A stretch of 64,000 nt of DNA from Macrostomum lignano (lineage: Eukaryota): positions 62,001-126,000 of the forward strand of contig NIVC01002089.1 in NCBI GenBank assembly GCA_002269645.1, given 5' to 3'. The translations under genes and the position numbers were made by a program. Every line of letters starts with the position of its first letter. Positions within the stretch are counted from its first letter, which is position 1. The notes beneath the pieces are model-generated. The model saw only the letters and a program-made list of their open reading frames with translations. It searched no databases and had not been told where the DNA came from. Of the stretch, positions 598 through 61,415 are shown piece by piece.

Positions 598-11720
<11,123 letters not shown>

Positions 11721-11812: not shown

Positions 11813-14800
11813 TGGAGACACGGTGGACACAATTAGAGACGCAGTGGACAGTATTAGGGACACGGTGGACACTATTAGAGATGCAGTGGACACTATTAGA
11901 GACACGGTGGACATAATTAAGAGACATGGTGGACACTATTAGAGACACGTTGGACCAATTCTAGACACGGTGGACACTATTAGAGACACGGTGGACACTA
12001 TTAGAGACACGGTGGACACTATTAGAGACACGGTGGACATAATTAGAGACACGGTGGACATAATTAAGAGACACGATGGACACTATTAGAGACACGTTGG
12101 ACACAATTCTAGACACGGTGGACACTATTAGAGACACGGTGGACACTATTGGAGACACGGTGGACACTATTGGAGACACGGTGGACACTATTAGAGACAC
12201 GGTGGACACTATTAGAGACACGGTGGACACTATTAGAGACACGGTGGACACTATTAGAGACACGGTGGAAATAATTAGAGACACGGTGGACACTATTAGA
12301 GACACGGTGGACATAATTAGAGACACGGTGGACACTATTAGAGACACGGTGGACATAATTAGAGACACGGTGGACACTATTAGAGACACGATGGACACTA
12401 TTAGAGACACGTTGGACATAATTAGAGACACGGTGGACACTATTAGAGACACGGTGGACATAATTAGAGACACGGTGGACACTATTAGAGACACGGTGGA
12501 CACTATTAGAGACACGGTGGACACTATTAGAGACACGGTGGACACTATTAGAGACACGGTGGACATAATTAGAGACACGGTGGACACTATTAGAGACACG
12601 GTGGACATAATTAGAGACACGGTGGACACTATTAGAGACACGATGGACACTATTAGAGACACGTTGGACACTATTAGAGACACGGTGGACATAATTAGAG
12701 ACACGGTGGACACTATTGGAGACACGGTGGACACTATTAGAGACACGGTGGACACTATTGGAGACACGGTGGACACTATTGGAGACACGGTGGACACTAT
12801 TGGAGACACGGTGGACACTATTAGAGACACGGTGGACACTATTAGAGACACGGTGGAAATAATTAGAGACACGGTGGACACTATTAGAGACACGGTGGAC
12901 ACTATTAGAGACACGGTGGACACTATTAGAGACACGGTGGACATAATTAGAGACACGGTGGACACTATTAGAGACACGGTGGACATAATTAGAGACACGG
13001 TGGACACTATTAGAGACACGATGGACACTATTAGAGACACGTTGGACACTATTAGAGACACGGTGGACATAATTAGAGACACGGTGGACACTATTAGAGA
13101 CACGGTGGACATAATTAGAGACACGGTGGACACTATTAGAGACACGGTGGACACTATTAGAAACACGGTGGACACTATTAGAGACACGGTGGACATAATT
13201 AGAGACACGGTGGACATAATTAAGAGACACGATGGACACTATTAGAGACACGTTGGACACAATTCTAGACACGGTGGACACTATTAGAGACACGGTGGAC
13301 ACTATTGGAGACACGGTGGACACTATTAGAGACACGGTGGACACTATTAGAGACACGTTGGACCAATTCTAGACACGGTGGACACTATTAGAGACACGGT
13401 GGACACTATTAGAGACACGGTGGACACTATTAGAGACACGGTGGACATAATTAGAGACACGGTGGACATAATTAAGAGACACGATGGACACTATTAGAGA
13501 CACGTTGGACACAATTCTAGACACGGTGGACACTATTAGAGACACGTTGGACACTATTAGAGACACGGTGGACATAATTAGAGACACGGTGGACACTATT
13601 AGAGACACGGTGGACACTATTAGAGACACGGTGGACACTATTAGAGACACGGTGGACACTATTAGAGACACGATGGACACTATTAGAGACACGTTGGACA
13701 CTATTAGAGACACGGTGGAAATAATTAAGAGACACGGTGGACACTATTAGAGACACGGTGGAAATAATTAGAGACACGGTGGACACTATTAGAGACACGG
13801 TGGACATAATTAGAGACACGGTGGACATAATTAGAGACACGGTGGACACTATTAGAGACACGGTGGACATAATTAGAGACACGGTGGACACTATTAGAGA
13901 CACGTTGGACACTATTAGAGGCACGGTGGACATAATTAGAGACACGGTGGACACTATTAGAGACACGGTGGACATAATTAGAGACACGGTGGACACTATT
14001 AGAGACACGGTGGACACTATTAGAGACACGGTGGACACTATTAGAGACCCGGTGGACACTATTAGAGACACGGTGGACATAATTAGAGACACGGTGGACA
14101 CTATTAGAGACACGGTGGACATAATTAGAGACACGGTGGACACTATTAGAGACACGATGGACACTATTAGAGACACGTTGGACACTATTAGAGACACGGT
14201 GGACATAATTAGAGACACGGTGGACACTATTGGAGACACGGTGGACACTATTAGAGACACGGTGGACACTATTGGAGACACGGTGGACACTATTGGAGAC
14301 ACGGTGGACACTATTGGAGACACGGTGGACACTATTAGAGACACGGTGGACACTATTAGAGACACGGTGGAAATAATTAGAGACACGGTGGACACTATTA
14401 GAGACACGGTGGACACTATTAGAGACACGGTGGACACTATTAGAGACACGGTGGACATAATTAGAGACACGGTGGACACTATTAGAGACACGGTGGACAT
14501 AATTAGAGACACGGTGGACACTATTAGAGACACGATGGACACTATTAGAGACACGTTGGACACTATTAGAGACACGGTGGACATAATTAGAGACACGGTG
14601 GACACTATTAGAGACACGGTGGACATAATTAGAGACACGGTGGACACTATTAGAGACACGGTGGACACTATTAGAAACACGGTGGACACTATTAGAGACA
14701 CGGTGGACATAATTAGAGACACAGTGGACATAATTAAGAGACACGATGGACACTATTAGAGACACGTTGGACACAATTCTAGACACGGTGGACACTATTA

Positions 14801-15290
14801 GAGACACGGTGGACACTATTGGAGTCACGGTGGACACTATTAGAGACACGGTGGACACTATTAGAGACACGTTGGACCAATTCTAGACACGGTGGACACT
14901 ATTAGAGACACGGTGGACACTATTAGAGACACGGTGGACACTATTAGAGACACGGTGGACATAATTAGAGACACGGTGGACATAATTAAGAGACACGATG
15001 GACACTATTAGAGACACGTTGGACACAATTCTAGACACGGTGGACACTATTAGAGACACGTTGGACACTATTAGAGACACGGTGGACATAATTAGAGACA
15101 CGGTGGACACTATTAGAGACACGGTGGACACTATTAGAGACACGGTGGACACTATTAGAGACACGGTGGACACTATTAGAGACACGATGGACACTATTAG
15201 AGACACGTTGGACACTATTAGAGACACGGTGGAAATAATTAAGAGACACGGTGGACACTATTAGAGACACGTTGGACACTATTAGACACA
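11813..15290. repeat. 21-bp satellite GACACGGTGGACACTATTAGA with ~1.4-1.5-kb higher-order repeats
   Basis: Direct reading; identical ORF translations offset by 1514 bp (13484 vs 14998; 13369 vs 14883). Confidence 0.97.
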
Positions 15291-16503
15291 ATTAGGTACT
15301 GTCTCTTTGCGCTGTTCCTAAAGCGCGAATTTGTACGAGAAGATTTGCCTCTGAAAGTTTTAGGATGTCAGCGGTTTATCCGCTAACTGCTGTCTCCTCA
15401 CCCATCGGCTTCCATGAAATGTACAAATCTCCTCCTACACTGTTTAATTTTACTCTGCTAACTACTTTAAGTATAACGTTTTAGAATTAGTTAGAGTAGA
15501 TTTTTTCTGATTTTGTAGTGCCACAAAAGTTGATTATTTGTGCATGTTCATCGATCAGTATTATCATTCAGAAAATTACGAGACCCTTTATAATATATTG
15601 TAGCCAAACTATGCCTTGTTAATTTAATTTCAAACCACCAACTGTAGAACATTACCCGGCATGCCTAACACATAGCAAAATTCGTTTCGTTTGTGACCGT
15701 ACTGAACCTTCAAGTTCAGATAATAAAATTCGAGCAGTGGAGACCCTCTTTTGTTTAAAGTTTAGGCTGAGTTTGAACAAGCCAAATAGATAAAAAGCGA
15801 CTTAAATAAACAGATCTCGACACTTTTAAATGTACACCATACGAGTATGGTCTTTCTAACCGTCTAGCGCCCAACCCCCCACACCCCTGATGTACTTTCT
15901 AACCATCCAACACCCACCCTCACACCCCAGATGTACTTTCTAACCCTTTAACACCCAACCCCAAACCCCGAATGTACTTTTAAATATAAATAAGACCCTC
16001 TAGTGCCCACCTCAGCCCAAAAATACTTTATTTTACCCCTACAACACCCTACTCACCCCCAATGTACTTTCTAACCTCACCTTGGTTGTGCATTCAAATT
16101 TCTCTTTGCCTGCATTTCGTGACCAGTAATTCGACCTTGCCTTGAACTTTTTCGATTTTAAACACTGATCATGCGGTCAATCTCTGGCACGAGTCGTTAG
16201 TTTTATACGTCGTACTTGGAAAAACTTCCAACAATAAAAGTGCTTTAGTCAATATTATAAAATGCTGAACCGGTCATAAATAGACAGTTTTTTATAGAGG
16301 AAAAGCTGGCAAGTTTCTCAATCACGTGACCCGATAACAGGGCGTGAGTGATTTCCCAAGCGCTCTGTGTTTAATTTCGCGATCGCTTCCCGGAAATGGG
16401 CTGGGCTGAAAATCCACTGATGGTAAGGGCCGGTATCCATGCTTTTTTATGGCAATTTAGTAATTACTTTCGTTAGTACAGGTATAACGTTAATTTTTTT
16501 ATA

Positions 16504-19500
16504 TCCTATATACTAAAAATGAGTTGTCTGTGGGTATGCGATAGATTTCAGAAAAATTGGCTCAACCGATTTTCTTCAAACTTGCACCATTCGATCAGAA
16601 ATTTTCCTGGGACGGTACATGCATCTTGGCTAAGAAATTGCTCAATGTTAAAGGGATTAAATATTCGAAAAACATGCTTTTTTGCAAAGGTCAAGCCAAA
16701 TTTTCCACTTGAAATGCATTGTAAGAATGCTAGAGAAAAAAACTGACTGGCTGAATTCCGATTGTGATAAAGATTGCATCACAACAAGTTGAAAACAGTG
16801 TCAAAGAAACGCACACACGACTTGAATTGAAATTGCGTAACCATATTGCCAACTTAAATTGAGACTGATACTGGCTGACTGAGAAATTGATTATGTCATA
16901 ACTTTTTGCTCCAATTGACTTGCTGTAAGAATTGAATTATAAGGGCCACAATTCATGTTCTCCAATTGAAAAAAGATAGCCCTGATGCGAACAGACTGGA
17001 ATGCTAATGTAGCGACCTGGGTTCGAATCTTAGTAGTGCAAAATAGATTTTTTTTATTAAAACACCTTAAAAACAAAAAACTGCTAAACATAAAAGAAGT
17101 GCAATGTCAAACATAGAAGAGCCACCATGTCGAACATTAAAGAGCCAACATATCGAACATAAAAGAGTTACCTGGTCAAACATAAAAGAGCCACCATGTC
17201 AAACCTAAATGAGCCACCATGTCTAATATTTAAGAGGCACCATGTAAAACATATAAGTGACTTTATGTCAAACATAAAAGAGCCACCATTTCGAACATTA
17301 AACAGCCACCATTTCGAACATTAAAGAGCCACCATGTTGAACATAAAAGAGTCACTATTTCGAACATCAAAGAGCCACCATTTCGAACATTAAAGAGCCA
17401 CCATGTCGAACAATAAAGAGCCACCATGTCAAAAATTAAACAGCCACCATGTTTAACAATAAAGAGCCACCATGTCAAACATTAAAGAGGCACCATGTCG
17501 AACATTAAAGAGCCATCATTACAGACATTAAGGTGCCACCAGGTCAAACATAAAAGAGCCACCATGTCTAACATTAACGAGTCACCATGTCAAACATTAA
17601 AGAGCCACCATGTCAAACATTAAAGAGCCACCATGTCAAACATTAAAGAGCCACCATGTCAAACATATACATGACTCCATGTCAAACATTAAAGAGCCAC
17701 CATGTCGAACATAAATGAGCTACCATGTCAAACATAAAAGAAAAACCATGTCAAACATTAAAGAGCCACCATGTCGAACATAAAAGAGCCACCATGTCGA
17801 ACATTAAAGAGCCACCATGTAAAACATTAAGAGCCACATTGTCAAACACTAAAGAGCCACTATGTCGAACCTAAAAGAGCCACCATGTCGAACAATAAAG
17901 AGCCACCATTTCAAACATTAAAGAGCCACCATGTCAAACATTAAAAAGGCCACCATGTCAAACATTAAAGAGCCACCATGTCAAACATTAAAGAGCCACC
18001 ATGTCAAACATAAAAGAGCCACCATGTCAAACATTAAAGAGCCATCATGTCAAACATTAAAGAGCCACCATGTCAAACATTAAAGAGCCACCATGTCAAA
18101 CATTAAAGAGCCACCATGTCAAACATTAAAGAGCCACCATATCAAACATTAAAGAGCTACCATGTCAAACATTAAAGAGCCACCATGTCAAACATTAATG
18201 AGCCACCATGTCAAACATTTAACATTTAACATTAAAGAGCCACCATGTCAAACATTAAAGCGCCACCATGTCAAACATAAAAGAGCCACCATTTCGAACA
18301 CTAAAGAGCCACTATGCCGAACCTAAAAGAGCCACCATGTCGAACAATAAAGAGCCACCATTTCAAACATTAAAGAGCCACCATGTCAAACATTAAAGAG
18401 CCACCATGTCAAACATAAAAGAGCCACCATTTCGAACACTAAAGAGCCACTATGTCGAACCTAAAAGAGCCACCATGTCGAACAATAAAGAGCCACCATT
18501 TCAAACATTAAAGAGCCACCATGTCAAACATTAAAGAGCCACCATGTCAAACATTAAAGAGCCACCATGTCAAACATTAAAGAGCCACCATGTCAAACAT
18601 AAAAGAGCCACCATGTCAAACATTAAAGAGCCATCATGTCAAACATTAAAGAGCCACCATGTCAAACATTAAAGAGCCACCATGTCAAACATTAAAGAGC
18701 CACCATGTCAAACATTAAAGAGCCACCATATCAAACATTAAAGAGCTACCATGTCAAACATTAAAGAGCCACCATGTCAAACATTAATGAGCCACCATGT
18801 CAAACATTTAACATTTAACATTAAAGAGCAACCATGTCAAACATTAAAGAGCCACCATGTCAAACATAAAAGAGCCACCACTTCGAACATAAAAGAGCCA
18901 CCATGTCGAACATTAAAGAGCCACCATGTCGAAAAAAGAGCCACCATGTTAAACATTAAAGAGCCACCATGTCAAACATTAAAGAGCCACAATGTCAAAC
19001 ATTAAAGAGCCACCATGTCAAACATTAAAGAGCCACCATGTCAAACATTAAAGAGCCACCATGTCAAACATTAAAGAGCTACCATGTCAAACATTAAAGA
19101 GCCACCATGTCAAACATTAAAGTGCCACCATGTCAAACATAAAAGAGCACCATGTCGAACATAAAAGAGCCACCATGGGGAACATTAAAGAGCCACTATG
19201 TCAAACATAAAAGAGCCACCATGTCAAACATATACGTGACTCCATGTCAAACATTAAAGAGCCACCATGTCAAACAACTGAGCCACCATGTCAAACATAA
19301 CAGAGCCACCATGCCAAACATAAAAGAGCACCATGTCGAACATAAAAGAGCCACCATGTCAAACATATACGTGACTCCATGTCAAACATTAAAGCGCCAC
19401 CATGTGAAACATATATGTGACTCCATGTCAAACATAAGAGGGCCAACATTGCGAACATTAAAGAGCCATTTCGTCAAACATATACGTGACTCCGTGTCAA

Positions 19501-21053
19501 ACATAAAAGAGCAACATGTCGAATATAAAATAGCCATCATGTCAAATATAAAAGAGCCACTATGCCAAACATAAAAGTGCCACCATGTCGAACATAAAAG
19601 AGCCACCATGTCAAACATATACGTAACTCCATGTCAAACAACTGAGCCACCATGTCAAACAACTGAGCCACCATGTCAAACAACTGAGCCACCATGTCAA
19701 ACAACTGAGCCACCATGTCAAACAACTGAGCCACCATGTCAAACAACTGAGCCACCATGTCAAACAACTGAGCCACCATGTCAAACAACTGAGCCACCAT
19801 GTCAAACAACTGAGCCACCATGTCAAACAACTGAGCCACCATGTCAAACATAACAGAGACACCATTTTAAACGTAAAAGGGCCGCCATGGCAAACATAGA
19901 AGAGCCATCATGTCGAACATTAAAGAGCCACCATGTCAAACATAGAAGAGACGTCATGTCAAACATAGAAGAGCCACAATTTCAAGCATAAAAGAGCCAC
20001 CGTTTCAAACATAAAAGAGACACCGTTTCAAACATAAAAAGTGTCATGCCAAACAAAACGGAGCCACTATAAAGCTAAGGAAATTGTTGCACTAGCTACT
20101 TGTTCTCTGTTGGATGATTGCTATTTAAGGATAGATACTTGCTATCAGGGGATGCTTGCTATCTGATGGATGCTTGCTATCTGAGGGATGCTTGCTATTG
20201 GTGGATGCTTGCTACCGGAAGGATGCTTGCTACTGGGGTTACTTGCTATTGGGAGATGCTTGCTCTTGGGGGGTGGAGGGTACTTGCTATCTTGAGAGGG
20301 GGTTGCTAGATATCTATAAGGTCTCTTTGTATCCAGGTTATGCTTGCTATCTGGGGTTGCTTGCGGTCTGGGGATGCTTGCTATCTTGGGGATGCTTGCT
20401 ATCTGGGGGATGCTTGCTATCTGGGGGATGCTTGCTATCTGGGGGATGTTTGCTATCTGGCGGATGCTTGCTATCTGGGGGATGCTTGCTATCTGGCGGA
20501 TGCTTGCTATCTGGGGTCTGGGGGATGCTTGCTATCTGGGGATGCTTGCTATCTGGGGTTTCTTGTTATCGGTGGATGCTTGCTATCTGGGGTTGCTTGC
20601 TATCTGGGGGATGCTTGCTATCTTGGGGATGCTTGCTATCTGGGGGATGCTTGCTATCTGGGGGATGCTTGCTATCTGGGGGATGCTTGCTATCTGGCGG
20701 ATGCTTGCTATCTGGGGGATGCTTGCTATCTGGCGGATGCTTGCTATCTGGGGTCTGGGGGATGCTTGCTATCTGGGGGATGCTTGCTATCTGGGGTTTC
20801 TTGCTATCGGGTGGATGCTTGCTATCTATGGGATGCTTGAAGTCTGGGTGATGTTTGCTATTTAGGTATCGATGCTTGAATGCTGTCTGGGGATGCTTGC
20901 TGTCTTGGGATGTTTTGTTTTTAGAGGAAATGTCTGTTGCTTTTTCATGAAGGCTTTATGACCCTGTCTATTTGTTATTTCTCTTGGAGTCTTTATTTGT
21001 AAAGAACAAGGATTCTATCCAGATGTCCCCCATCGGGGGGCGAAGATTGCTAG
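16504..21053 (+). mobile_element. Non-autonomous Helitron, copy 1
   Basis: Starts A|TCCTATATACTAAAAATG; ends CCCCCATCGGGGGG hairpin + CGAAGATTG + CTAG. Contains a conserved ~600-bp 5' region, a 23-bp satellite (GAGCCACCATGTCAAACATTAAA) and a 17-18-bp satellite (GGATGCTTGCTATCTGG). No Rep/helicase ORF. Confidence 0.85.
16970..17055 (+). pseudogene. tRNA-derived Pol III-type cassette inside the Helitron (also ~21520-21602, 24755-24835, 28322-28400)
   Basis: A-box-like TAGCCCTGATG at 16977; anticodon-arm-like CTGGA-ATGCTAA-TGTAG; T-arm CTGGG-TTCGAAT-CTTAG (B box 17020-17029); T-run at 17048-17055. Confidence 0.6.
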
Positions 21054-24000
21054 TCCTATATACTAAAAATGAAATGTGTGTCTCTGTGAGATAGATTTCA
21101 GAAAAAACGGCTTAACCGATTTTCTTCAAACTTGCACCATTCGATCAGAAATTTTCCTGGGACGGTACATGCATCTTGGCTAAGAAATTGCTCAATTTTA
21201 AAGGGATTAAATATTCGAAAAACATGCTTTTTTGCAAAGGTCAAGCAGCTCTTTCGACCTGAAATGCATTGTAAGAATGCTAGAGAAAAAACTGACTGAC
21301 TGAATTCTGATTCTGACAAAGATTGCATCACAACAAGTTGAAAACAGTGCCGAAGAAATGCACACACGACTTGAATGAAATTGCGTAACCATATTGGCAA
21401 CTTAAATTGAGACTGATTCTGGCTGACTGAGAAATTGATTATGTCATAACTTTTTACTCCAATTGACTTGCTGTAAGAATTGAATTATAAGGGCCACAAT
21501 TTATGTTCTCCAATTGAAAAAGATAGCCCAGATGCGAACAGACTGGAATGCTAATGTAGCGACTTGGGTTCGAATCTTAGTAGGGCAAAAAAGATTTTTT
21601 TTATTAAAACACCTTAAAAACACAAAACTTCTAAACATAAAAGAAGCGCAATGTCAAACATAGAAGAGCCACCATGTCGAACATAAAAGAGCTAACATAT
21701 CGAATATTAAAGAGCCACCATGTCAAACCTAAACGAGCCACCATGTCTAATATTTAAGAGGCACCATATAAAACATATAAGTGACTTTATGTCAAACATA
21801 AAAGAGCCACCATTTCTAACATTAAACAGCCACCATTTCGAACATTAAAGAGCCACCATGTCGAAAATAAAAGAGTCACTATTTCGAACATCAAAGAGCC
21901 ACTATGTCAAACATTTAGGAGCCACTTTTTCGAACATTAAAGAGCCACCATGTCAAACATAAAAGAGCCAACATGTCAAACATAAAAGAGCCAACATGTC
22001 AAACATAAAGAGCCACCATGTCAAACATTTAAGAGCCACCATGTCAAACATATATGTGACTTTGTGTTAAACATTAAAGAGCCACCATTTCGAACATTAA
22101 AGAGCCACCATGTCAAACATGAAAGAGCTATAACATGAAGAATATTAAAGAGCCACCATGTCGAACATAAAAGAGCTGCCATGTAAAATAACAAAGAGCT
22201 ACCAAGTTAAACATAAAAGAGCCACCATGTAAAACATTAAAGAGCCACCATGTGAAACATTAAAGAGCCACATTGTCAAACCTAGAAGAGCCACCATGTC
22301 GAACATAACAGAGCTACCATGTCAAACATTAAAGAGCCACCATGTCAAACATTCAAAAGCCACATTGTCAAACATTGAAGAGCCACTATGTCAAACATTT
22401 AGGAGCCACTTTGTCGAACATTAAAGAGCCAACATGTCAGACATTAAAAAAGTTACCGTATCAAATAAAAAGAGTTAACATGTAGAACAAAAAATAGCCA
22501 CCATTTCGAACATAAAAGAGCCAACATGTCAAACATAAAGAGCCACCATGTCAAACATTTAAGAGCCACCATGTCAAACATATATGTGACTTTATGTCAA
22601 ACATTAAAGAGCCACCATTTCGGACATAACAGAGCTACCATGTAAAACATTAAAGAGCCACCATGTCAAACATTAAAGAGCCACCATGTCGAACATTAAA
22701 GAGCCACCATGTCAAACCTAAAAGAGCCACCATGTCGAAAATAAAAGAGCCACTATTTCGAACATTAAAGAGCCACCATTTCGAACATTAAAGAGCCACC
22801 ATGTCGACCATAAAAGAGCCACTATTTCGAACATTAAATATCCACCATGTCAAACATAAAAGAGCCAACATGTCAAACATAAAAGAGCCAACATGTCAAA
22901 CATAAAGAGCCACCATGTCGAAAATGAAAGAGCCACTATTTCGAACATTAAAGAGCCACCATTTCGAACATTAAAGAGCCACCATGTCGACCATAAAAGA
23001 GCCACCATGTCAAACATGAAAGAGCTATAACATAAGAATATTAAAGAGCCACCATGTCGAACATTAAAGAGCCACCATGTCGAACATAAAAGAGCCACCA
23101 TGTCAAACCTAAAAGAGCCACCATGTCGAACATAAAAGAGCTATATCATGAAAAAAATTAAAGAGCCACTATCTCGAACATTAAAGAGCCACCATGTCAA
23201 ACATTTAAGAGCCACCATGTCAAACATTTAAGAGCCACCATGTCAAACCTAAAAGAGCCACCATGTCAAACCTAAAAGAGCCACCATGTCAAACCTAAAA
23301 GAGCCACCATGTCGAACATAAAAGAGCTATACCATGAAAAACATTAAAGAGCCACTTTCTCGAACATTAAGGAGCCACCATGTCAAACATTTAAAAGCCA
23401 CCTTGTCAAACATTAAATAGCCACTTTGTCGAACATTAAAGAGTCACTGTGTCAAACATAAAAGAGCCACTGTTTCAAACATAAAAGAGCCACCAGGTTA
23501 AACATTAAAGAGCCACCATGTCAAACAATAAAGAGGCACCATGTCAAACATAAAAGAGCCACCATGTCTGACATTAAAAAGCCATCGTTTCAAACATAAA
23601 ACAGTTGCCATGTAGAACTTAAAACAGCCACCATGTCAAACATAAAATTTACACAATTTCAAACATAAAAGTAAGCGAATTTTAAAGGAGCCACTATAAT
23701 GCTAAGGAAATTATCGCACTAGCTACTTATTGTCTGGTGGATGCTTGCTATTTGGGATGCTATCTATGTAGGGGATGCTTGCTATCTGGCGGATGCTTGC
23801 TATCTGGGGATGCTTGCTATCTGGGGATGCTTGCTATCTGGGGGTTGCTTGTAATCTGGAAGATGCCTGCTATCTGGCGGATGCTTGCTATCTGGGGGAT
23901 GCTTGCTATCTGGGGGATGCTTGCTATCTGGGGATGCTTGCTATCTGGGGTTGCTTGTAATCTGGAAGATGCTTGCTATCTGGCGGATGCTTGCTATCTG

Positions 24001-24278
24001 GAAGATGCTTGCTATCTGGCGGATGCTTGCTATCTGGGGATGCTTGCTATCTGGCGGATGCTTGCTATCTGGGGATGCTTGCTATCTGGGGGATGCTTGC
24101 TATCTGGGGGATGCTTGCTATCTGGGGGATGCTTGCTGTCTTGGGATGATTTCTTTTTGCTTCCTTTGAGTATTTTGTCTGTTTTTTTTGTGAAGGCCTT
24201 TTTTGGCTATCTTTTTGTTACTTGTAGAGAACAGAGGTTCTATACAGATGTCCCCCAACGGGGGGCGAAGATTGCTAG
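21054..24278 (+). mobile_element. Non-autonomous Helitron, copy 2
   Basis: CTAG|TCCTATATAC junction at 21053/21054; same architecture; ends CCCCCAACGGGGGG-CGAAGATTG-CTAG. Confidence 0.85.
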
Positions 24279-27200
24279 TCCTATATACTAAAAATGAGTT
24301 GTCTGTATGTGGGTAGGTATGCGATAGATTTCAGAAAAAATGGCTCAACCGATTTTCTTCAAACTTGCACCATTTGATCAGAAATTTTCCTGGGACGGTA
24401 CATGCATCTTAGCTAAGAAATTTATCAATTTTAAAGGGATTAAATATTCGAAAAACATGCTTTTTTGCAAAGGTCAAGCCAAATTTTCGACTTGAAATGC
24501 ATTGTAAGAATGCTAGAGAAAAAACTGACTGACTGAATTCCTATTCTGATAAAGATTGCATCACAACAAGTTGAAAACAGTGCCGAAAAAATGCACACAC
24601 GACATGATTTAAATTGCGTAACCATATTGCTAACTTAAATTGAGACTGATACTGGCTGACTGAGAAATTGATTATGTCATAACTTTTTACTCCAATTGAC
24701 TTGCTGAAAGAATTGAATTATAAGGGCCACAATTCATGTTCTCCAATTAAAAAGAGATAGCCCTGATGCAAACAGACTAGAATGCTAATGTAGCGACCTG
24801 GGTTCGAATCTTAGTAGTGCAAAAAGATTTTTTTTATTAAAACACCTTAAAAACACAACAAAACTGCTAAACATCAAAGAAGCGCAATGTCAAACATAGA
24901 AGAGCCAACATATCGAACATAAAAGAGTTACCATGTCAAACATAGAAGAGCCACCATGTCAAACATAAAAGACCCACCATGTCAAACATAAAAGACCCAC
25001 TATGTCAAACATAAAAGAGCCACCATTTCCAACATTAAAGAGCCACCATTTCGAACATTAAAGAGCCACCATTTTGAACATTAAAGAGCCACTATGTCAA
25101 ACAATTAGGAGCCAACATGTCAAACATTAAAGAGCCACCATGTCGAACATAAAAGAGCCACCATTTTGAACATTAAAGAGCCACCATGTCGAACATTAAA
25201 GAGCCACCATGTCGAACATTAAAGAGCCAACATGTCAGACATAAAAAAGCCACCGTATCAAACATAAGAGTTACCATGTAGAACAAAAAAGATCCACCAT
25301 GTTGAACATTCAAGAGGCACCATGTCAAACATATATGTGACTTTAAGTCAAACATTAAAGAGCCAACATGTCAGACATAAAAAAGCCACCGTATCAAACA
25401 TAAGAGTTACCATGTAGAACAAAAAAGATCCACCATGTTGAACATTCAAGAGGCACCATGTCAAACATATATGTGACTTTATGTCAAACATTAAAGAGCC
25501 ACCATTTCGAACATTTAAGAGCCACCATGTCGAACATAAAAGAGCCACCATGTCAAACATTTAAGAGCCACCATGTCAAACATTTAAGAGCCACCATGTC
25601 AAACATTTAAGAGCCACCATGTCAAACATTTAAGAGCCACCATGTCAAACATATATGTGACTTTATGTCAAACATTAAAGAGCCACCATTTCGAACATTT
25701 AAGAGCCACCATTTCGAAAATTTAAGAGCCACCATGTCGAACATAAAAGAGCCACCATGTCAAACATTTAAGAGCCACCATGTCAAACATTTAAGAGCCA
25801 CCATGTCAAACATTTAAGAGCCACCATGTCAAACATTTAAGAGCCACCATGTCAAACATTTAAGAGCCACCATGTCAAACATATATGTGACTTTATGTCA
25901 AACATTTAAATGTTTGACATGGTGGCTCTTTAATGTTTCACATGGTGGCTCTTTAATGTTTAACATGGTGGCTCTTTAATGTTCTTCATGATGTAGCTCT
26001 TTTATGTTACACATAGTGGCACTTTAACGTTCGACATGGTGGCTCTTTAATGTTTGACATAAAGTCACATATATGTTTGACATGGTGGCTCTTAAATGTT
26101 TGACATGGTGGCTCTTAAATGTTTGACATGCTGGCTCTTTTATGTTTGACATCGTGGCTCTTTAATGTTCTTCATGGTATAGCTCTTTTATGGTAGACAT
26201 AGTGGCTCTTTAATGTTTGACAATGTGGCTCTTTAATGTTTGACATGGTGGCTCTTTTATGTCTTACTTGGTAGCATTTTTATGTTTGAAATGGTGGCTC
26301 TTTTATGTTTGATATGGTGCCTCTTTTCTGTTTAATGTTTAATGTTTGACATGGTGGCTCGTTTGACATGGTGGCTCTTTAAGATTCAAACATAAAAGAG
26401 ACACCATGTCAAACATAGAAGAGCCACCGTGTCAACATAGAAGAGACACCATGTAAAAAATAGAAGAGCCACCATGTCAAACATTAAAGAGCCACCATTT
26501 CAAACATAAAAGAGCCACCGTTTCAAACATAAAATGAAGTGTCATGCCAAACAAAATGGAGCCACTATAAAGCTATGGAAATTTTTGCACTAGCTACTTG
26601 TTCTCTGGTGGATGCTTGCTATTTAAGGATAGATACTTGCTATCAGGTGGATGCTTGCTTTCTGAGGGATGCTTGCTATTCGAGGGATGCTTGCTACTGG
26701 GGTTACCTGCTATTGGGAGATGCTTGCTATTGGGGGGTGGAGGGTACTTGCTATCTGAGAGCGGGTTGCTAGATATCTATATGGTCTCTTTTTATCCAGG
26801 TTATGCTTGCTATCTTGGGTTGCTTGCGGTCTAGAGGATGCTTGCTATCTGGGGGATGCTTGCTATTCGGGGGGATGCTTGCTATTCGGGGGATGCTTGC
26901 TATCTGGGGATGCTTGCTATCTGGGGGATGCTTGCTATCTGGGGATGCTTGCTATCTGGGGGATGCTTGCCATCTGGGGGATGCTTGCTATCTGGGGGAT
27001 GCTTGCCATCTGGGGGATGCTTGCTATCTGGGGTCTGGGGGATGTCTGCTATCTGGGGTCTGGGATGCTTGCTATCTGAGGGATGCTTGCTATCTGGGTT
27101 GCTTGCTATCTGGGGGATGCTTGCAGTCTGGGGATGCTTGCAGTCTGGGGGATGCTTGCAGTCTGGGGGATGCTTGCTATTTGGGGATCAATGCTTGAAT

Positions 27201-27835
27201 GCTCTCTGGGGATGCTTGCTGTCTTGGGATGTTTTGCTTTTAGAGGGAATGTCTGTTGTTTTTCGAACATAAAAGAGCCACCATGTAGAATATTAAAGAG
27301 CAACCATGTCAAACATTTAAGAGCCACCATTTCAAACATAAAAGAGCCACCATGTCAAACAATAAAGAGCCACCATTTCGAACATAAAAGATGCACAATT
27401 TCAAACGTAAAAGTAAGCGAATTTTAAAGGAGCCACTATAATGCTAAGGAAATTGTCGCACTAGCTACATATTGTCTGGTGGATGCTTGCTATTTGGGGA
27501 TGCTATCTATCTGGGGGATGCTTGCTATCTGGAGGATGCTTGCTATCTGGGGGATGCTTGCTATCTGGGGGATGCTTACTATTTGGGGGATGCTTGCTAT
27601 CTGGGGGATGCTTGCTATTTGGGGATGCTATCTATCTGGGGGATGCTTACTATTTGGGGGATGCTTGGTATCTGGGGGATGCTTGTCGTCTTGGGATGAT
27701 TTCGTTTTGCATTGCACTTCATTTGAGTATTTTGTCTGTTTTCTTTGTGAAGGCTTTATTTGGCTATCTTTTTGTTACTGGTAGAGAACAGAGATTCTAT
27801 ACAGATGACCCCCAACGGGGGGCGAAGATTGCTAG
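24279..27835 (+). mobile_element. Non-autonomous Helitron, copy 3 (internal inversion, chimeric 3' half)
   Basis: Same termini; satellite inverted at 25908-26381; two successive 17-bp-satellite tails. Confidence 0.85.
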
Positions 27836-30800
27836 TCCTATATACTAAAAATGGTCTGTCTGTGTCTATGTGATCGATTAGAGAAAAAATGGCTGGACCG
27901 ATTTTTTTCAAACTTGCACTGTTCGATCAGAAATTTTCCCGTGACTGTACATGCATCGTGGCTAAGAAATTGTTCGATGCTAAAGGCATTAAATATTCGA
28001 AAAACATGCTTTTTTGCAAAGGTCAAGCAAACTTTTCGACTTGAAATGCATTGTAAGAATGCTAGAGAAAAAACTGACTGGTTGAATTCTGATTCTGAAA
28101 TAGATTGCATCATAACTGAATTGTAACTCCGACTTGAATTGAAAATGCAGTGTGGAAGCGTAGCACCAGACTTGATTTAAATTGCGTAACCATATTGTTA
28201 ACTGATACTGACTGACTGAGAAACTGATTATGTCATAACTGCTTCGTGTGATTTACTCTATGCTTGGATTTTAGAGTGTTGAATTATATAAGTGCAAAAT
28301 TTGATGTTATCAAAATGATGAGAGCTAGCCTAGAGGTGAACAAACTGAACTGCTAAATGCAGCGACGATGGTTCGAATTTTCATAGTGTATAATTTTTTT
28401 AATTAAAGCTTTTCAACGTCAGGAAAACTAAAAGACTTTTTAAAAAGAATCGTCATGAAAAAATCATAGAAGCGTCATGTAAAAAAATCATAGAAGCGTC
28501 ATGTAAACAATCATAGAAGCGTCATTTAAAAAATCATAGAAGCGTCATTTAAAAAATCGTAGAAGCGTCATGTAAACAATCATAGAAGCGTCATGTAAAA
28601 AATCATAGAAGCGTCATATAAACAATCATAGAAGCGTCATTTAAAAAATCATAGAAGCGTCATGTAAACAATCATAGAAGCGTCATTTAAAAAATCATAG
28701 AAGCGTCATGTAAACAATCATAGAAGCGTCATGTAAAAAATCATAGAAGCGTCATGTAAACAATCATAGAAGCGTCATTTAAACAATCATAGAAGCGTCA
28801 TTAAAAAATAATAGAAGCGTCATTTAAAAAATCATAAAAGCGTCATTTAAAAATCATAGAAGCGTCATATAAAAATCGTAGAAGCGTCATGTAAACAATC
28901 ATAGAAGCGTCATGTAAAAAATCATAGAAGCGTCATATAAAAATCATAGAAGCGTCATTCAAAAAATCATAGAAGCGTCATGTAAACAATCATAGAAGCG
29001 TCATGTAAACAATCATAGAAGCGTCATGTAAACAATCATAAAAGCGTCATGTAAACAATCATAGAAGCGTCATGTAAACAATCATAGAAGCGTCATTTAA
29101 ACAATCATAGAAGCGTCATGTAAACAATCATAGAAGCGTCATTTAAACAATCATAGAAGCGTCATTAAAAAATAATAGAAGCGTCATTTAAAAAATCATA
29201 GAAGAGTCATGTAAAAAATCATAGAAGCGTCATGTAAACAATCATAGAAGTGTCATGTAAAAAATCATAGAAGCGTCATTTAAAAAATCATAGAAGCGTC
29301 ATGTAAACAATCATAGAAGCGTCATGTAAACAATTATAGAAGCGTCATGTAAACAATCATAGAAGCGTCATGTAAACAATCATAGAAGCGTCATGTAAAC
29401 AATCATAGAAGCGTCATGTAAACAATCATAGAAGCGTCATGTAAACAATCATAGAAGCGTCATGTAAACAATCATAGAAGCGTCATGTAAACAATCATAG
29501 AAGCGTCATGTAAACAATCATAGAAGCGTCATGTAAAAAATCATAGAAGCGTCATGTAAAAAATCATAGAAGCGTCATTAAAAAATCATTGAAGCGCCAT
29601 TTAAAAAATCATAGAAGCGTCATATAAAAATCGTAGAAGCGTCATGTAAACAATCATAGAAGCGTCATGTAAAAAATCATAGAAGCGTCATATAAAAATC
29701 ATAGAAGCGTCATTCAAAAAATCATAGAAGCGTCATGTAAACAATCATAGAAGCGTCATGTAAAAAATCGTAGAAGCGTCATGTAAAAAATCTTAGAAGC
29801 GTCATGTAAACAATCATAGAAGCGTCATGTAAACAATCATAGAAGCGTCATGTAAACAATCATAAAAGCGTCTTGTAAACAATCATAGAAGCGTCATGTA
29901 AACAATCATAGAAGCGTCATTTAAACAATCATAGAAGCGTCATTAAAAAATAATAGAAGCGTCATTTAAAAAATCATAGAAGAGTCATGTAAAAAATCAT
30001 AGAAGCGTCATGTAAACAATCATAGAAGCGTCATATAAAAATCATAGAAGCGTCATGTAAAAAATCATAGAAGCGTCATGTAAACAATCATAGAAGCGTC
30101 ATGTAAACAATTATAGAAGCGTCATGTAAACAATCATAGAAGCGTCATGTAAACAATCATAGAAGCGTCATGTAAACAATCATAGAAGCGTCATGTAAAC
30201 AATCATAGAAGCGTCATGTAAACAATCATAGAAGCGTCATGTAAACAATCATAGAAGCGTCATGTAAACAATCATAGAAGCGTCATGTAAACAATCATAG
30301 AAGCGTCATGTAAAAAATCATAGAAGCGTCATGTAAAAAATCATAGAAGCGTCATTAAAAAATCATTGAAGCGCCATTTAAAAAATCATAGAAGCGTCAT
30401 ATAAAAATCGTAGAAGCGTCATGTAAACAATCATAGAAGCGTCATGTAAACAATCATAGAAGCGTCATGTAAACAATCATAGAAGCGCCATGTAAAAAAT
30501 CATAGAAGCGTCATGTAAACAATCATAGAAGTGTCATGTAAAAAATCGTAGAAGCGTCATGTAAACAATCATAGAAGCGTCATGTAAACAATCATAGAAG
30601 CGTCATGTAAACAATCATAGAAGCGTCATATAAAAATCATAGAAGCGTCATGTAAAAATCATAGAAGCGTCAAGAAAAAATCATAGAAGCCTCATTTAAA
30701 AACTAATGAAAGTGTCATTTAAAAAATTAAGAAGCGTCACGGTAGAATAAAAAAACGTCATGTCAGACATGAAGGGTTCATGTAAAAATTAAATGCAATT

Positions 30801-31833
30801 ATAATGCTGTGCTGGGGAGAAAAACTGAGACGTAAAGGCTCTCAGAGAATAACTGAGATTACGGGGGGGGGTTTCTGAGATGTCAAAGCAAAAGTCAGAA
30901 GCTACTTCAAAGTTCATGTCACGGGGGGGGGCGCTGATAGAAGAAGAGTCATGTAAAAAATAAAAGTAGCACTATGTATACATAAAATAAAAGTCATGTC
31001 GAAGTTGAAAGATTCATTTGGGAATTGCTACGATGTCAAAGCTTGGTGGAAATCGTTATAGTGCTGTTATTCTTAAAGAAGGAATCACTAAAATGTCAAG
31101 GCTTAGGGGAGAAGAATTGCTGAGATTTCAAGGCTTTAGGTTGGGTTAAAGTTAGGTTTAGGTCAGGTGTGGGTTGAGGGTTATATTTTATCGGGTTTCA
31201 AGGTTAACAGGGGATTTTTTAGATTTCAAGGTTTATGGGGCCATTGCTGACATGTCAAGGCTTACGGGGGGAATAGCTGAGATGTCAAGGCTCACGGGGG
31301 TATAAATGAGATTTCAAGGCTAAAGTCAGAAGCTACATGTAGTTTATTGAAAACTTTTTATTACATTATTTGATGCCTCCTCAGGGGAGGGATCGCTGAT
31401 AAAAAAGCGTAATGTAAAAAATAAAATAAGCTTCATGTCGAAGTTAAGAGATTCATTTGGGAATCCCTACGATGTTGAGGCTTGCAGGGAATCGCTATAA
31501 TGCTGTAGTAGTGCTATAATGACTCTTAGAGAGAATTACTGAAATTTCAATGCTTTAGGGTTAGGTTAGGGTTAGGGTTAGGGTTAGGGTTAGGCTAGGG
31601 TTAGGGTTAGAAGGTTGACAGATATTTTTAGATTTCCAAGGCTTATTGGGGGCATTGCTGAGATGTCAAGGGGGGAAGTTGATATGTTAAAGCTTGTGGG
31701 GGGGGATAACTGACATGTCAAGGCTTACAAGGTTTGACAGAAGATTTTTTAGGATTTCAAGGATACATGTAGCTTATTAAAAAAACGTGTATTGCATTTC
31801 TTTGGCTCCCCAACGGGGGGCGTAGATTGCTAG
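27836..31833 (+). mobile_element. Non-autonomous Helitron, copy 4 (most diverged; different internal satellite)
   Basis: TCCTATATACTAAAAATG start; ends CCCCAACGGGGGG-CGTAGATTG-CTAG|T. Internal 23-bp satellite AATCATAGAAGCGTCATGTAAAC (~28450-30730). Confidence 0.82.
31555..31610 (+). repeat. Interstitial telomere-like (TTAGGG)n, ~9 units, inside Helitron copy 4
   Basis: Direct reading; degenerate homolog at ~31134-31175. Confidence 0.85.
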
Positions 31834-32018: not shown

Positions 32019-33273
32019 GATCGCCCTACACTGACCTGCTCACTCAGAAGATTCTGGAGTTCAGAGATCGGCAAATTTTAGAGCGGCTGAAGCTGTACTA
32101 TTGGGCAGTTGATCGTAGCGCCGTGGACTATTTGATTGACTTTGGTCGCACTGGAAAGTCACGTGATAAATCAAATAATAGCCGAAAATGCGCCTTAAAT
32201 GAAAGGGTGAGTTTCTGCCCGGTTAAACTCGCCGGCCAATCGGCAGAGAGAAGAAGACAGAATAGGACAGGGGACAGGGGAGGAGGGTGCACTCGTAAGC
32301 CAATCAGCGAAGAGGAGAGGACAGAAAATCTAAAGAGAGGGTGGACTCGTCAGCCAATCAACGAAGAGGAGAGGACAGAATATAGGAAAGAGAGGGTGGT
32401 CTCGTCAGCCAATCAACGAAGAGGAGAGGACAGAAAATCTAAAGAGAGGGTGGACTCGTCAGCCAATCAACAAAGAGGAGAGGACAGAATATAGGAAAAA
32501 GAGGGTGGACTCGTCAGCCAATCAACAAAGAGGAGAGGACAGAATATAGGAAAAAGAGGGTGGACTCGTCAGTCAATTGAAGAAGCGAAGAGGGCATAAT
32601 AGATACGAGCTAGGATAGAGAGGAGAGGGTGAACTCGTCAGCCAATCAACAAAGAGTATAGTGCCGCTATGCTAAAAATGGTCATCAAAAAATTTTGCTT
32701 TTAAAATCATCAGACTTGCAGACGCAAGCAAGCAAGTAACAGTTGGCCGAACAAAAGAAAACGTTCTAAACGACGCTGTCCCCTTCGTAACAAGCCGTCG
32801 CGCTATAGCGAACTAACATTGGATCACGTGATGGGCACGTTTGTACTTTTGGCCGCCGCCATGCTGCTGGGGCCAATCGCCACCGTTGCAGAAATTATCT
32901 GGCACTGCTGCTTTAAAGCAGACTCGCTTAAAACAAAGGTTAGCAAGATTCTACGCTGCAGTTTTTCTTGGAGGATTGATATAGATAGATATGCGTCTAT
33001 TTTTGCATGTCATTCGAACTTTTAACGCGAGACAAAATTTTACCGAAATAACAGGACCAACGGCGGGGCTCGCGGTGCTCTCGGCTGTGCAGGGTCAACG
33101 CCAGACATGTTTCGAAACATAAAGCCAGGCATCACAGCGGCGCCGATCAAAGACTGGAGACGGAGCCGCAAATCTATACGGTCGGAGGCTCAGCGGAACA
33201 GCGGCTGCGATCAGCCCAGATGCGGGGGATGAGACAGCACTGGCGGAGTCGGCGGAATGAAGCCTGGGACTGA
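32019..33273 (+). CDS. Second iGluR 3' module (end of S2, M4, C-tail); putative alternative 3' exons of the 598-11720 gene
   Basis: Exons 32019-32206 (phase 1, (G)SPYTDLLTQKILEFRDRQILERLKLYYW...KCALNER|GTGAGT), 32714-32938 (...LTLDHVMGTFVLLAAAMLLGPIATVAEIIWHCC...KTK|GTTAGC) and 33055-33273 (DQRRG...RRNEAWD*). All have AG/GT boundaries and open frames, and are paralogous to exons 9764-10032 and 11310-11720. Confidence 0.75.
32283..32655. repeat. 54/55-bp tandem repeat carrying CGTCA-GCCAATCA motifs
   Basis: CCAAT at 32300, 32354, 32409, 32463, 32518 and 32642 (variant at ~32573). Confidence 0.9.
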
Positions 33274-33286
33274 TCGAGAGGATTGC

Positions 33287-33700
33287 TAGACTGGCGCACC
33301 AGTGTAGGATTAGCACGGATTGCTAGACTGGCCAATCGGTGTAGGATTAGACTGGATTGCTAGACTGGCCATTCGGTGTAGTATTAGAATGGATTGCTAG
33401 TCTGGCCAATCGGTGTAGGATTAGAATGGATTGCTAGACTGGCCCATCGGTGTAGGATTAGAATGGATTGCTAGACTGGCCAATCGGTGTAGGATTAGAA
33501 TGGATTGCTAGACTGGCCCATCGGTGTAGGATTAGAATTGATTGCTAGACTGGCCCATCGGTGTAGGATTAGAATGGATTGCTAGACTGGCCAATCGGTG
33601 AATGATTAGACTGGATTGCTAGACTGGCCAATCGGTGTGGATTAGAATGGATTGCTAGACTGGCCAATCGGTGTGGATTAGAATGGATTGCTAGACTGAC
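33287..33700. repeat. 37-bp minisatellite GGATTGCTAGACTGGCCAATCGGTGTAGGATTAGAAT
   Basis: Direct reading; starts just after stop 33273. Confidence 0.93.

Positions 33701-43689: not shown

Positions 43690-61415
<17,726 letters not shown>

What the first reader, a model, noticed from the sequence alone, without database searches (positions are those of the whole stretch)
32019..33273. Orphan duplicate iGluR 3' module: a flip/flop-like swap of S2 end, M4 and C-tail, 23 kb downstream across a Helitron stack
Seen: three exons not captured as one ORF in the track. Exon 32019-32206 starts in phase 1, so the donor at 9060 (…GIGLPS-G|) gives G-S-P-Y exactly as with exon 9764. Ungapped alignment [28 protein letters not shown] vs SPYTDLLTQKILEFRDRQILERLKLYYW gives 12/28 identities, including the shared ILxF and Q.LE.L pattern. 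M4 aligns at 9/27, the post-M4 phase-0 intron is conserved, and the tails end EAFA* and EAWD*. I found no ATD/S1/M1-M3 exons in the unique DNA at 15296-16503 or 31834-32018. Established: vertebrate AMPA flip/flop exons swap this same S2 region to tune desensitisation, but leave M4 and the tail unchanged. Inference: this gene has independently evolved mutually exclusive terminal modules that change gating segment, M4 and cytoplasmic tail together. About 60% amino-acid divergence with intact frames and splice sites argues for selection.
Basis: partly seen in the sequence, partly recalled or inferred. Interest (0 to 1): 0.82.

Follow-up and report, generated by a model that had tools for sequence, protein, structure and literature searches.

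The report
Orphan glutamate-receptor end piece, probably a relic
About 22 kb downstream of a flatworm kainate-type glutamate receptor gene lies a real but very diverged second copy of the receptor's last ligand-binding and membrane segment, more likely a leftover of a lost neighbouring gene than an alternative ending of the first one.

Summary
The window is Macrostomum lignano-type DNA. Gene A, on the + strand, is a kainate-type iGluR. Its S2-end plus M4 unit is one exon (9764-10032), followed by a conserved tail exon (11310-11720).

A profile built from 56 outside iGluRs ranks the two B reading frames second and third among 2199 window ORFs (E 3.9e-5 and 0.0018; next best 0.58).

- B is one ancestral exon split by a 642-nt lineage-specific insertion. 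With the insertion removed, B aligns end to end at 45 bits.
- The third "exon" (33055-33273) has no tail homology.
- B is no closer to A (33-36% identity) than to iGluRs of other phyla, so it is not a recent copy of A's module.

Points in B's favour: no stop or frameshift, coding-like GC3, and an internal GT..AG pair stronger than in 99.9% of shuffles. So B was part of a spliced gene until recently.

No other iGluR exon lies near it. The Helitron-like stack is confirmed.

Best reading: truncated remnant of a tandem paralogue (confidence about 0.5). An alternative 3' module of gene A is not excluded (about 0.2). Only transcript data or orthologous loci can decide.

The parts
8835..9060 (+).
   Evidence: 100% identical to the M. 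lignano UniRef protein P0001; S2 profile E=1e-37
9764..10032 (+). Gene A's own S2-end + linker + M4 unit, a single exon (phase-1 acceptor, phase-0 donor AAG|gtcagt)
   Evidence: Profile HMM 78-79 bits; PDB GluK2/3/5 at E about 1e-12; exon end corrected to 10032
11310..11720 (+). Gene A tail exon with the conserved MxELxxELxLALRC..RKRP motif; stop at 11718-11720 (…REAFA*)
   Evidence: Tail profile E=1.7e-4; translation
11815..15290 (.). 21-bp satellite starting 95 nt after gene A's stop codon
   Evidence: TRF, 165 copies
15296..16503 (.). Unique DNA that was contiguous with 31834-32018 before the Helitron insertion; no iGluR exon remains; holds the first AATAAA motifs after gene A's stop (15722, 15805, 16233)
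16504..31833 (+). Four head-to-tail non-autonomous Helitron-like elements (16504-21053, 21054-24278, 24279-27835, 27836-31833) filled with 23-bp and 18-bp satellites; host A(16503)|T(31834)
   Evidence: 5' TCCTATATAC… found four times; 3' CCCCCAACGGGGGG hairpin plus …GATTGCTAG found four times; 5' 600 nt are 92-93% identical among H1-H3 and 76% to H4
32019..32104 (+). B, S2-end core: (G)SPYTDLLTQKILEFRDRQILERLKLYYW, behind a cag|G phase-1 acceptor
   Evidence: HMM positions 1-33, E=0.0026 for this stretch; GluD-like P0136 52% identical, E=1.4e-4; GC3 0.68
32105..32206 (+). 34 open codons with no counterpart in any iGluR (AVDRS…CALNER); left part of the 642-nt insertion; coding only if the 32207 donor is used
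   Evidence: GC3 0.35, like non-coding DNA; absent from A, P0122 and all aligned iGluRs
32207..32713 (+). 507-nt intron-like segment (AGG|gtgagt … tcatcag|A) holding a 55-bp tandem array (32283-32577) and in-frame stops
   Evidence: TRF and repeat finder; it is the only frame-preserving, stop-free strong splice pair, matched or beaten by 0.07% of 3000 shuffles
32714..32746 (+). 11 codons (TCRRKQASNSW); right part of the insertion
32747..32938 (+). B, linker Cys + M4 + post-M4: PNKRKRSKRRCPLRNKPSRYSELTLDHVMGTFVLLAAAMLLGPIATVAEIIWHCCFKADSLKTK, with donor AAG|gttagc at the same phase-0 position as in A
   Evidence: HMM E=5.6e-5 for this stretch; joined to the S2 core it gives one 44.9-bit end-to-end match; GC3 0.60
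33055..33273 (+).
   Evidence: No hit with the tail profile; weak acceptor, -3.1; little codon-position contrast in GC
33280..33698 (.). 37-bp satellite starting 7 nt after the putative B stop; each unit carries the Helitron-end 9-mer GATTGCTAG

Best explanation
Positions 32019-32938 are the surviving last coding unit of a second, strongly diverged iGluR paralogue. The unit covers the end of ligand-binding lobe S2, the S2-M4 linker with its disulfide cysteine, and helix M4. This paralogue (gene B) once lay in tandem downstream of the kainate-type gene A.

Shown:
- It is homologous to iGluRs.
- The unit is a single exon in A and in the nearest outside relative.
- In B it is split by a 642-nt lineage-specific insertion whose central 507 nt has strong, frame-preserving splice sites.
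- Every other iGluR exon is missing between gene A's stop and B.
- Before the 21-bp satellite and the Helitron-like stack arrived, B lay only about 1.5 kb downstream of A's stop.

Inferred:
- Gene B was a working, spliced gene after it acquired that intron.
- It then lost its 5' body (ATD to S2 start) in the remodelling of the A-B interval. The loss was recent enough that no stop, frameshift or splice-site lesion has accumulated in the 93 homologous codons.
- On its own the fragment cannot make a receptor. At most it is a silent pseudo-exon pair, or it is occasionally picked up by read-through transcripts of gene A.
For: - Homology.
- Single-exon ancestry and the extent of the insertion.
- Orphan status: no second M3 or S2 exon, and no further tblastn hit with three full-length or long iGluRs.
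- B is not derived from A. Identity is 33-36% to A, 39-41% to P0122 and 52% to a GluD-like protein in the S2 helix; P0122 is the nearest neighbour in 68% of resamplings.
- B has the lowest profile score of all full-length modules compared: 45 bits, against 62-133 for the others. It also has a proline in mid-M4 and YW in place of WW, which fits relaxed constraint.
- B has no conserved tail exon.
- Gene A has its own intact, conserved M4 exon and tail.
- The A-B interval is satellite plus Helitron DNA. The M. lignano genome is known to be rich in tandem repeats and duplicated blocks (PMC5730564).
- The genes downstream are on the other strand: a GPCR at 37655-39406 and syndetin from 43.7 kb. B therefore has no + strand partner downstream.
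Against: - B shows no disabling lesion.
- GC3 of the two homologous parts (0.68 and 0.60) is still coding-like, against 0.35-0.47 in the flanks.
- The acceptor at 32019 and the 32207/32713 pair score as well as or better than gene A's own sites.
- The relic model needs an extra, recent deletion of the whole 5' gene body. The alternative-module model needs no such event.
- The Helitron copies differ by 7-24%, so the interval is not very young. A fragment dead for that long would be expected to carry lesions.
Confidence: 0.5

Rival explanations
1. Alternative 3' module. Transcripts of gene A that skip A's own M4 and tail exons and its poly(A) site splice 9060 to 32019, then 32206 to 32714. The result would be a subunit with a different S2 end, a 55-residue W-to-Cys linker and a different M4, ending shortly after M4.
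For: - B is on the same strand, downstream, with a compatible phase.
- It is intact, with coding-like GC3.
- Its splice sites are strong; the internal pair is matched or beaten by only 0.07% of shuffles.
- It is orphan, so gene A's exons are the only possible partners in the window.
- It lay only about 1.5 kb beyond A's stop before the repeat insertions.
- A's own M4-exon acceptor is weak on a generic matrix, at -8.3.
- No extra deletion event is needed.
Against: - No transcript or protein with this junction exists in 5.8 billion clustered proteins. M. lignano is barely represented there, so this is weak evidence.
- B is no closer to A than to iGluRs of other phyla. The arrangement would then have to be ancient, yet no conserved example is known.
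- The linker would be far longer than in A, P0122 or any other aligned iGluR.
- No homologous tail exists.
- It would require a 23-kb intron, where M. lignano introns average 1.1-1.4 kb (PMC5730564).
- No docking/selector complementarity above chance was found.
- Phase match is a family trait, not evidence of use.
Confidence: 0.22
2. B is the 3' end of an intact second iGluR gene whose upstream exons are missing from this sequence. The cause would be a collapse or misjoin of the assembly inside the satellite and Helitron arrays, or a structural variant in the sequenced haplotype.
For: - B is intact and has strong splice sites.
- The 20 kb between A and B is almost entirely arrays that are hard to assemble.
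- M. lignano assemblies are known to be difficult for this reason (PMC5730564).
Against: - The window has no N runs.
- The Helitron stack has a clean A|T host junction at both outer ends, so 16503 and 31834 were adjacent before insertion.
- The unique 1.4 kb upstream of B holds no exon remnant.
Confidence: 0.1
3. B is a gene fragment moved here by Helitron 3' read-through (transduction). On this view 31834-33279 is captured DNA between the terminus at 31833 and the terminus-like GATTGCTAG array at 33280-33698.
For: - B starts 185 nt after a canonical Helitron 3' end.
- B is followed by 12 copies of the same terminal 9-mer, which is expected 0.73 times in the whole window.
- Helitron read-through capture is experimentally documented (PMC4778049).
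Against: - A captured iGluR fragment landing by chance on the same strand just downstream of another iGluR gene is very unlikely (my estimate, below 1e-3).
- No parent gene or other copy appears in the protein searches or elsewhere in the window.
- The other three elements carry no such cargo.
Confidence: 0.05
4. Chance similarity: the region is non-coding DNA that happens to resemble an iGluR.
For: Pfam finds nothing in B. The word-indexed search of 5.8 billion proteins found nothing at E<=10.
Against: - There are two independent, colinear, same-frame profile hits, ranked second and third of 2199 ORFs.
- They merge into a single 45-bit end-to-end match once the insertion is removed.
- Seventeen proteins reach E<=0.001 among 1.84 billion representatives; all nine fetched carry this iGluR segment.
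- The match starts exactly at an AG acceptor and ends exactly at a GT donor, at the family's exon borders.
Confidence: 0.01

Closest known systems
Truncated gene remnant (unprocessed partial pseudogene) next to a tandem paralogue
   Same: It is an isolated run of 3' coding sequence. It keeps the parental exon borders and intron. It sits on the same strand next to a family member. Repeat insertions lie in between.
   Different: It carries no stop, frameshift or splice-site lesion, and its codon-position GC bias is still coding-like. It is therefore either very young as a relic or not a relic.
AMPA-receptor flip/flop mutually exclusive exons
   Same: Both concern the S2 stretch just before M4. 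Flip/flop are two 115-nt exons encoding 38 residues in the extracellular loop before the fourth membrane segment, and they change desensitisation (PMC3592400).
   Different: Flip and flop are adjacent, equal in length and highly similar, lie between shared flanking exons, and leave M4 untouched. B lies beyond gene A's stop codon and tail exon. It is 33-36% identical to A, is split by an insertion that adds 45 codons, and includes M4. No transcript evidence exists for B.
Alternative last exons (alternative 3'-terminal modules selected by splicing versus proximal polyadenylation)
   Different: B has no poly(A) signal motif (AATAAA or ATTAAA) after it up to 33760. It has no transcript support. 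The distal module is a diverged paralogous copy that includes a membrane helix, which I do not know to have been described for iGluRs (own knowledge, not searched exhaustively).
Helitron gene-fragment capture by 3' read-through
   Same: B is bracketed by a canonical Helitron 3' end and a terminus-like repeat, in the same orientation (PMC4778049).
   Different: B lies outside the canonical elements, next to a gene of its own family. No second copy is known.

Membership tests
Ionotropic glutamate receptor (S2-end / M4 segment) | Significant match to a family profile of the S2 end, linker and M4 | tested here: met
   The two B ORFs score E=3.9e-5 and 0.0018 among 2199 window ORFs. With the insertion removed, B gives 44.9 bits end to end. 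iGluRs dominate the PDB hits and the hits among 1.84 billion representatives.
Ionotropic glutamate receptor (S2-end / M4 segment) | Pfam Lig_chan (PF00060) at the gathering score | tested here: not met
   No Pfam hit for B. Gene A's single exon alone is also below the cut-off (18.9 against 30.8 bits), so the test is weak for a fragment of this size.
Ionotropic glutamate receptor (complete subunit gene) | ATD, S1, M1-M3 pore region and S2 start encoded upstream of the S2-end/M4 unit | tested here: not met
   M3 and S2 profiles, and tblastn with P0001, P0125, P0131 and P0136, find only gene A's exons.
Ionotropic glutamate receptor (S2-end / M4 segment) | Conserved residues: GSPY start, W before the linker, linker Cys, V.G.F and the Glu of M4 | tested here: met
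   All are present in B. WW is YW, as in P0122. One proline sits in mid-M4.
Mutually exclusive exon pair (flip/flop type) | Two homologous exons lying between the same flanking constitutive exons | tested here: not met
   B lies 20 kb beyond gene A's tail exon and stop codon.
Mutually exclusive exon pair (flip/flop type) | Equal length and phase, so that either exon keeps the frame | tested here: inconclusive
   The phase-1 entry is compatible. But B is two exons, has 45 more codons than its core, and has no shared downstream exon.
Mutually exclusive exon pair (flip/flop type) | Transcripts that contain one or the other, never both | not testable with these tools
   No M. lignano transcript data are reachable. 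Protein searches found no junction product, but the species is barely represented in those collections.
Mutually exclusive exon pair (flip/flop type) | The alternative exon is a close copy of its partner | tested here: not met
   B is 33-36% identical to A, and A is not among B's nine nearest sequences.
Processed (retrotransposed) pseudogene | Loss of introns and splice borders; poly(A) tract | tested here: not met
   B begins at an AG and ends at a GT at the family's exon borders, and it contains an intron.
Helitron (the 16504-31833 stack) | 5'-TC and CTRR-3' ends, a short palindrome upstream of the 3' end, and insertion between host A and T (PMC4778049) | tested here: met
   TCCTATATAC… occurs four times. 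CCCCCAACGGGGGG plus …CTAG occurs four times. The host junction is A16503|T31834.
Helitron (the 16504-31833 stack) | RepHel transposase gene (autonomous element) | tested here: not met
   There is no long non-repetitive ORF in 16.5-31.8 kb. The elements are filled with 23-bp and 18-bp satellites, so they are non-autonomous.

The most novel reading that the evidence does not exclude
A flatworm kainate-type receptor gene uses a distal, anciently diverged terminal module. By skipping its own M4 and tail exons it would swap the S2 end (the flip/flop region), the S2-M4 linker and the M4 helix together. One gene would then produce two subunits with different gating and assembly surfaces. To my knowledge no iGluR is known to exchange M4 by splicing.
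Probability: 0.2. Interest if true: 0.7.

Novelty: new member of a known kind. Interest (0 to 1): 0.33.

Why it matters
If B is a relic, it is an ordinary by-product of tandem gene duplication and repeat-driven remodelling in a very repeat-rich genome. It would be useful mainly for annotation, so that B is not merged into gene A's model.

If the minority reading holds, it would be the first case of an iGluR exchanging its M4 helix and pre-M4 gating segment by alternative splicing. M4 and the flip/flop region govern tetramer assembly and desensitisation, so this would give a natural experiment on how those parts co-evolve. The question can be settled cheaply with existing M. lignano RNA-seq.

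Tried and rejected
- Two further calls failed technically.
- The last allowed search, with P0122, returned only itself. No larger B-type family could be assembled.
- Pfam on B gave nothing.
- The look-up of the neighbouring GPCR, meant to fetch a duplicate locus containing B, was not on record.
- The contig of the nearest relative (L001, 1570 nt, run DRR639838) is too short to show its gene context. The run is not mentioned in any searchable paper.
- The first attempt at an RNA duplex test for docking/selector pairing timed out. The simpler longest-complement test showed nothing above chance.
- Rfam and tRNA scans of the window were empty.
- Helitron capture was rejected on the argument of positional coincidence.
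- SL trans-splicing onto 32019 was considered and set aside. An AUG donated directly before 32019 would read a different frame that stops after 21 codons (frame B 1). That the M. lignano leader ends in AUG is from memory and was not checked.
Full report
**Source and setting**

The window is Macrostomum lignano DNA or something nearly identical. The UniRef protein A0A1I8JQ94 (P0001) matches window exons 7649-7870, 8835-9060 and the start of 11310 at 98-100%. The window has no N runs.

Tandem arrays fill most non-coding space. This fits the published description of this genome: more than half is repetitive, 15% is simple and tandem repeats, introns average 1.1-1.4 kb, and there are large duplicated blocks (PMC5730564).

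**Gene A**

Gene A is a kainate-type iGluR on the + strand. Its exons are detectable from about 4.7 kb onwards:
- S1: 5832-5990 and 6253-6417
- M1: 7105-7287
- M3: 7634-7870
- S2: 8835-9060
- S2 end + linker + M4, as one exon: 9764-10032 (78-79 bits against an outside profile; GluK2/3/5 at about 1e-12 in the PDB)
- Tail: 11310-11720, with the conserved MxELxxELxLALRC…RKRP motif (tail profile E=1.7e-4)

Yes for the first two intervals.
The counts 12/28 and 9/27 are correct.
- I built a profile of the S2-end/M4 unit from 56 iGluRs, none from this window, and searched all 2199 six-frame ORFs of at least 15 codons. A's exon came first (5e-23). The two B ORFs came second and third (32705-33022 at E=3.9e-5; 32003-32491 at E=0.0018). 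The fourth ORF was at 0.58.
- In the PDB, 13 of the 15 sequences with E<10 are iGluRs (GluD1 best, 0.023). They align at GSPY…WW and at RC…M4.
- A full HMMER scan of 1.84 billion representatives gave 17 proteins at E<=0.001. All nine that I fetched carry this iGluR segment.

Chance is excluded.

1. *B is one ancestral exon, not two.*
   - The part in between has no counterpart in any iGluR. It consists of 34 codons after YYW, the 507-nt 'intron' and 11 codons before PNK.
   - Removing 32105-32746 (642 nt, a multiple of three) gives GSPY…LKLYYW|PNKRKRSKRRC…M4…KTK. This aligns end to end as a single 44.9-bit match with a normal W-to-Cys spacing.
   - Gene A has this unit as one exon. So does the closest outside relative, P0122, on a 30%-GC Logan contig. 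That contig shows the same phase-1 acceptor (cag|GC TCT CCA TAT) and the same phase-0 donor (AAG|gtaata).
2. *The third 'exon' (33055-33273) is unsupported.* It does not match the tail profile, which does find A's tail. Its acceptor is poor and its GC shows little codon-position contrast.
3. *B is not a copy of A's module.*
   - Identity is 33-36% to A and 39-41% to P0122.
   - In the S2 helix, identity to a GluD-like protein is 52%, against 37.5% for that protein's match to A.
   - A is not among B's nine nearest sequences.
   - P0122 is the nearest neighbour in 68% of 1000 column resamplings.

**What speaks for B having been, or being, functional**

- There is no stop or frameshift in the 93 homologous codons.
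- Family-conserved positions are kept.
- GC3 is 0.68 in the S2 core and 0.60 in M4, like gene A's exons (0.52-0.85). It is 0.35 in the 34-codon extension, 0.31 in the read-through after M4, and overall GC is 0.35-0.47 in the flanks.
- The insertion is not a plain wreck.
  - The pair AGG|gtgagt (32207) and tcatcag|A (32713) is the only strong GT..AG combination that keeps the frame without stops.
  - With fixed thresholds, such a pair arises in 0.05-0.6% of dinucleotide shuffles of the insert.
  - With a threshold-free generic log-odds score, 0.07% of 3000 shuffles reach the real value.
  - The matrices were written from memory of general metazoan consensus and are not species-specific. The direction of the result is robust to that; the exact p-value is not.
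- I conclude that B belonged to a spliced, translated gene after the insertion happened.

**What speaks against present use**

- B is the lowest-scoring full-length module in the comparison: 45 bits, against 62-72 for other flatworm-type modules and GluD1, and 79 for A.
- It has a proline in the middle of M4.
The same stretch is 8 residues in A and 5 in P0122, and short in the other aligned receptors.
- It has no homologous tail, and no AATAAA or ATTAAA up to 33760.
- Nothing downstream could continue it. The next genes are on the minus strand: a rhodopsin-family GPCR at 37655-39406 (7tm_1, 8e-66) and syndetin/VPS50 from 43.7 kb.

**Orphan status and the interval between A and B**

- Profiles of the M3 and S2 exons find no second set of upstream exons anywhere in the window. 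Nor does tblastn with P0001, with the full-length kainate-type and delta-like proteins P0125 and P0131, or with the GluD-like fragment P0136.
- The interval consists of:
  - 95 nt after A's stop
  - a 21-bp satellite (11815-15290)
  - 1.2 kb of unique DNA (15296-16503)
  - four head-to-tail elements (16504-31833)
  - 185 nt of unique DNA
- The four elements meet the Helitron end definition:
  - Each begins TCCTATATAC….
  - Each ends with a CCCCCAACGGGGGG palindrome, about 12 nt of spacer, and CTAG.
  - The host bases are A16503 and T31834.

  This matches the definition quoted from PMC4778049.
- None of the four has a transposase ORF.
- So 16503 and 31834 were once adjacent, and B lay about 1.5 kb beyond A's stop.
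- The copies differ by 7% (H1-H3) to 24% (H4) in their 5' 600 nt.

**Weighing the explanations**

B must have evolved for a long time inside a working iGluR. That was either a separate downstream paralogue or a distal module of gene A.

*Relic.* This fits B's lack of special relation to A, the missing tail, the odd linker and the low profile score. It also fits the high general frequency of gene fragments in repeat-rich, duplicated genomes. Its cost is one recent deletion of a whole gene body that happened to spare B.

*Alternative module.* This needs no deletion and explains why B is intact. Its costs are:
- an ancient, otherwise unknown architecture;
- skipping of a good proximal terminal module;
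- an intron that is now 23 kb long;
- a linker far outside the family range.

Phase compatibility with the 9060 donor is a family trait and carries no weight. A search for docking/selector complementarity between intron 9061-9763 and the DNA upstream of B gave 10 nt, against 9.3 in shuffles.

My estimates are:

| Explanation | Confidence |
|---|---|
| Relic of a tandem paralogue | 0.5 |
| Alternative 3' module of gene A | 0.2 |
| Assembly loss of a second gene body | 0.1 |
| Helitron transduction | 0.05 |
| Unassigned remainder | about 0.15 |

Helitron transduction is suggested by the GATTGCTAG array at 33280-33698. It is made unlikely by the coincidence of landing beside a gene of the same family.

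**Comparison with what is known**

Flip/flop exons are two adjacent, equal-sized (115 nt, 38 aa), highly similar exons placed before M4. They change desensitisation kinetics (PMC3592400). But B fails the structural criteria of such a pair (position, similarity, length), and its use is untested.

The best-fitting known category is an unprocessed, truncated paralogue remnant.

**Verdict**

The homology is real and well above chance. The three-exon 'module with its own tail' is not real. The flip/flop-like splicing claim is unproven and, on balance, less likely than a recent relic. It stays cheaply testable with existing RNA-seq, and it would be notable if true.

Noticed in passing
window 9060-11420 versus protein P0001 (UniRef A0A1I8JQ94): The public M. 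lignano gene model skips gene A's M4 exon. It reads two codons into the intron (…LPSG-T, donor at 9066) and joins straight to the tail exon at 11310. It also has frame errors in the M1 exon and after LALRC, where the window's frame fits the family consensus (C.GS.K/R.P). This looks like an annotation or assembly artefact of the older assembly. The public protein lacks M4.
   Followed up: partly
window 37655-39406 (-): An intact single-exon rhodopsin-family GPCR of 583 aa (Pfam 7tm_1, 8e-66). It has DRF and NPxxY motifs and a long glycine/alanine-rich third loop, and looks aminergic. GC3 is about 0.9-0.98. No identical gene product is on record in the contig collection.
   Followed up: partly
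window 43693-53326 (-): A syndetin/VPS50 gene (Syndetin_C, 3.9e-68, at 43693-44592; a weak Vps54_N match at 52460-53326). One intron holds a 4-kb (TCTG)n microsatellite at 47487-51555.
   Followed up: partly
window 31556-31610: About nine units of telomere-type TTAGGG repeat lie inside the last Helitron-like element, 220 nt before its 3' end.
   Followed up: no
window 33280-33698: Each unit of the 37-bp satellite contains GATTGCTAG, the same 9-mer that ends the four Helitron-like elements. There are 17 occurrences in the window against 0.73 expected. The array may derive from a Helitron 3' end.
   Followed up: partly
window 7912-8707, 10052-11273, 11815-15290: At least two of gene A's introns (7871-8834 and 10033-11309) are largely filled by a single tandem array that starts a few dozen bases after the donor. 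A 3.5-kb 21-bp satellite starts 95 nt after the stop codon. No AATAAA or ATTAAA occurs between the stop and the satellite; the first motifs in the intervals scanned are at 15722, 15805 and 16233. Gene A's 3' end is therefore unclear.
   Followed up: partly
window 9744-9763: The acceptor of gene A's own M4 exon (aaaatggcaaaatcgcacag|G) is purine-rich and scores -8.3 on a generic acceptor matrix. This is far below the other sites, including B's acceptor at 32019 (-0.1). The matrix is not species-specific.
   Followed up: no
locus L001 (Logan DRR639838 contig, 1570 nt), 772-1173: This is the closest relative of B found anywhere: P0122, 39-41% identical, sharing KILEFxDRQI…YW. It is a single exon in a 30%-GC genomic contig of unknown organism. 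No other member of this subgroup could be retrieved.
   Followed up: partly
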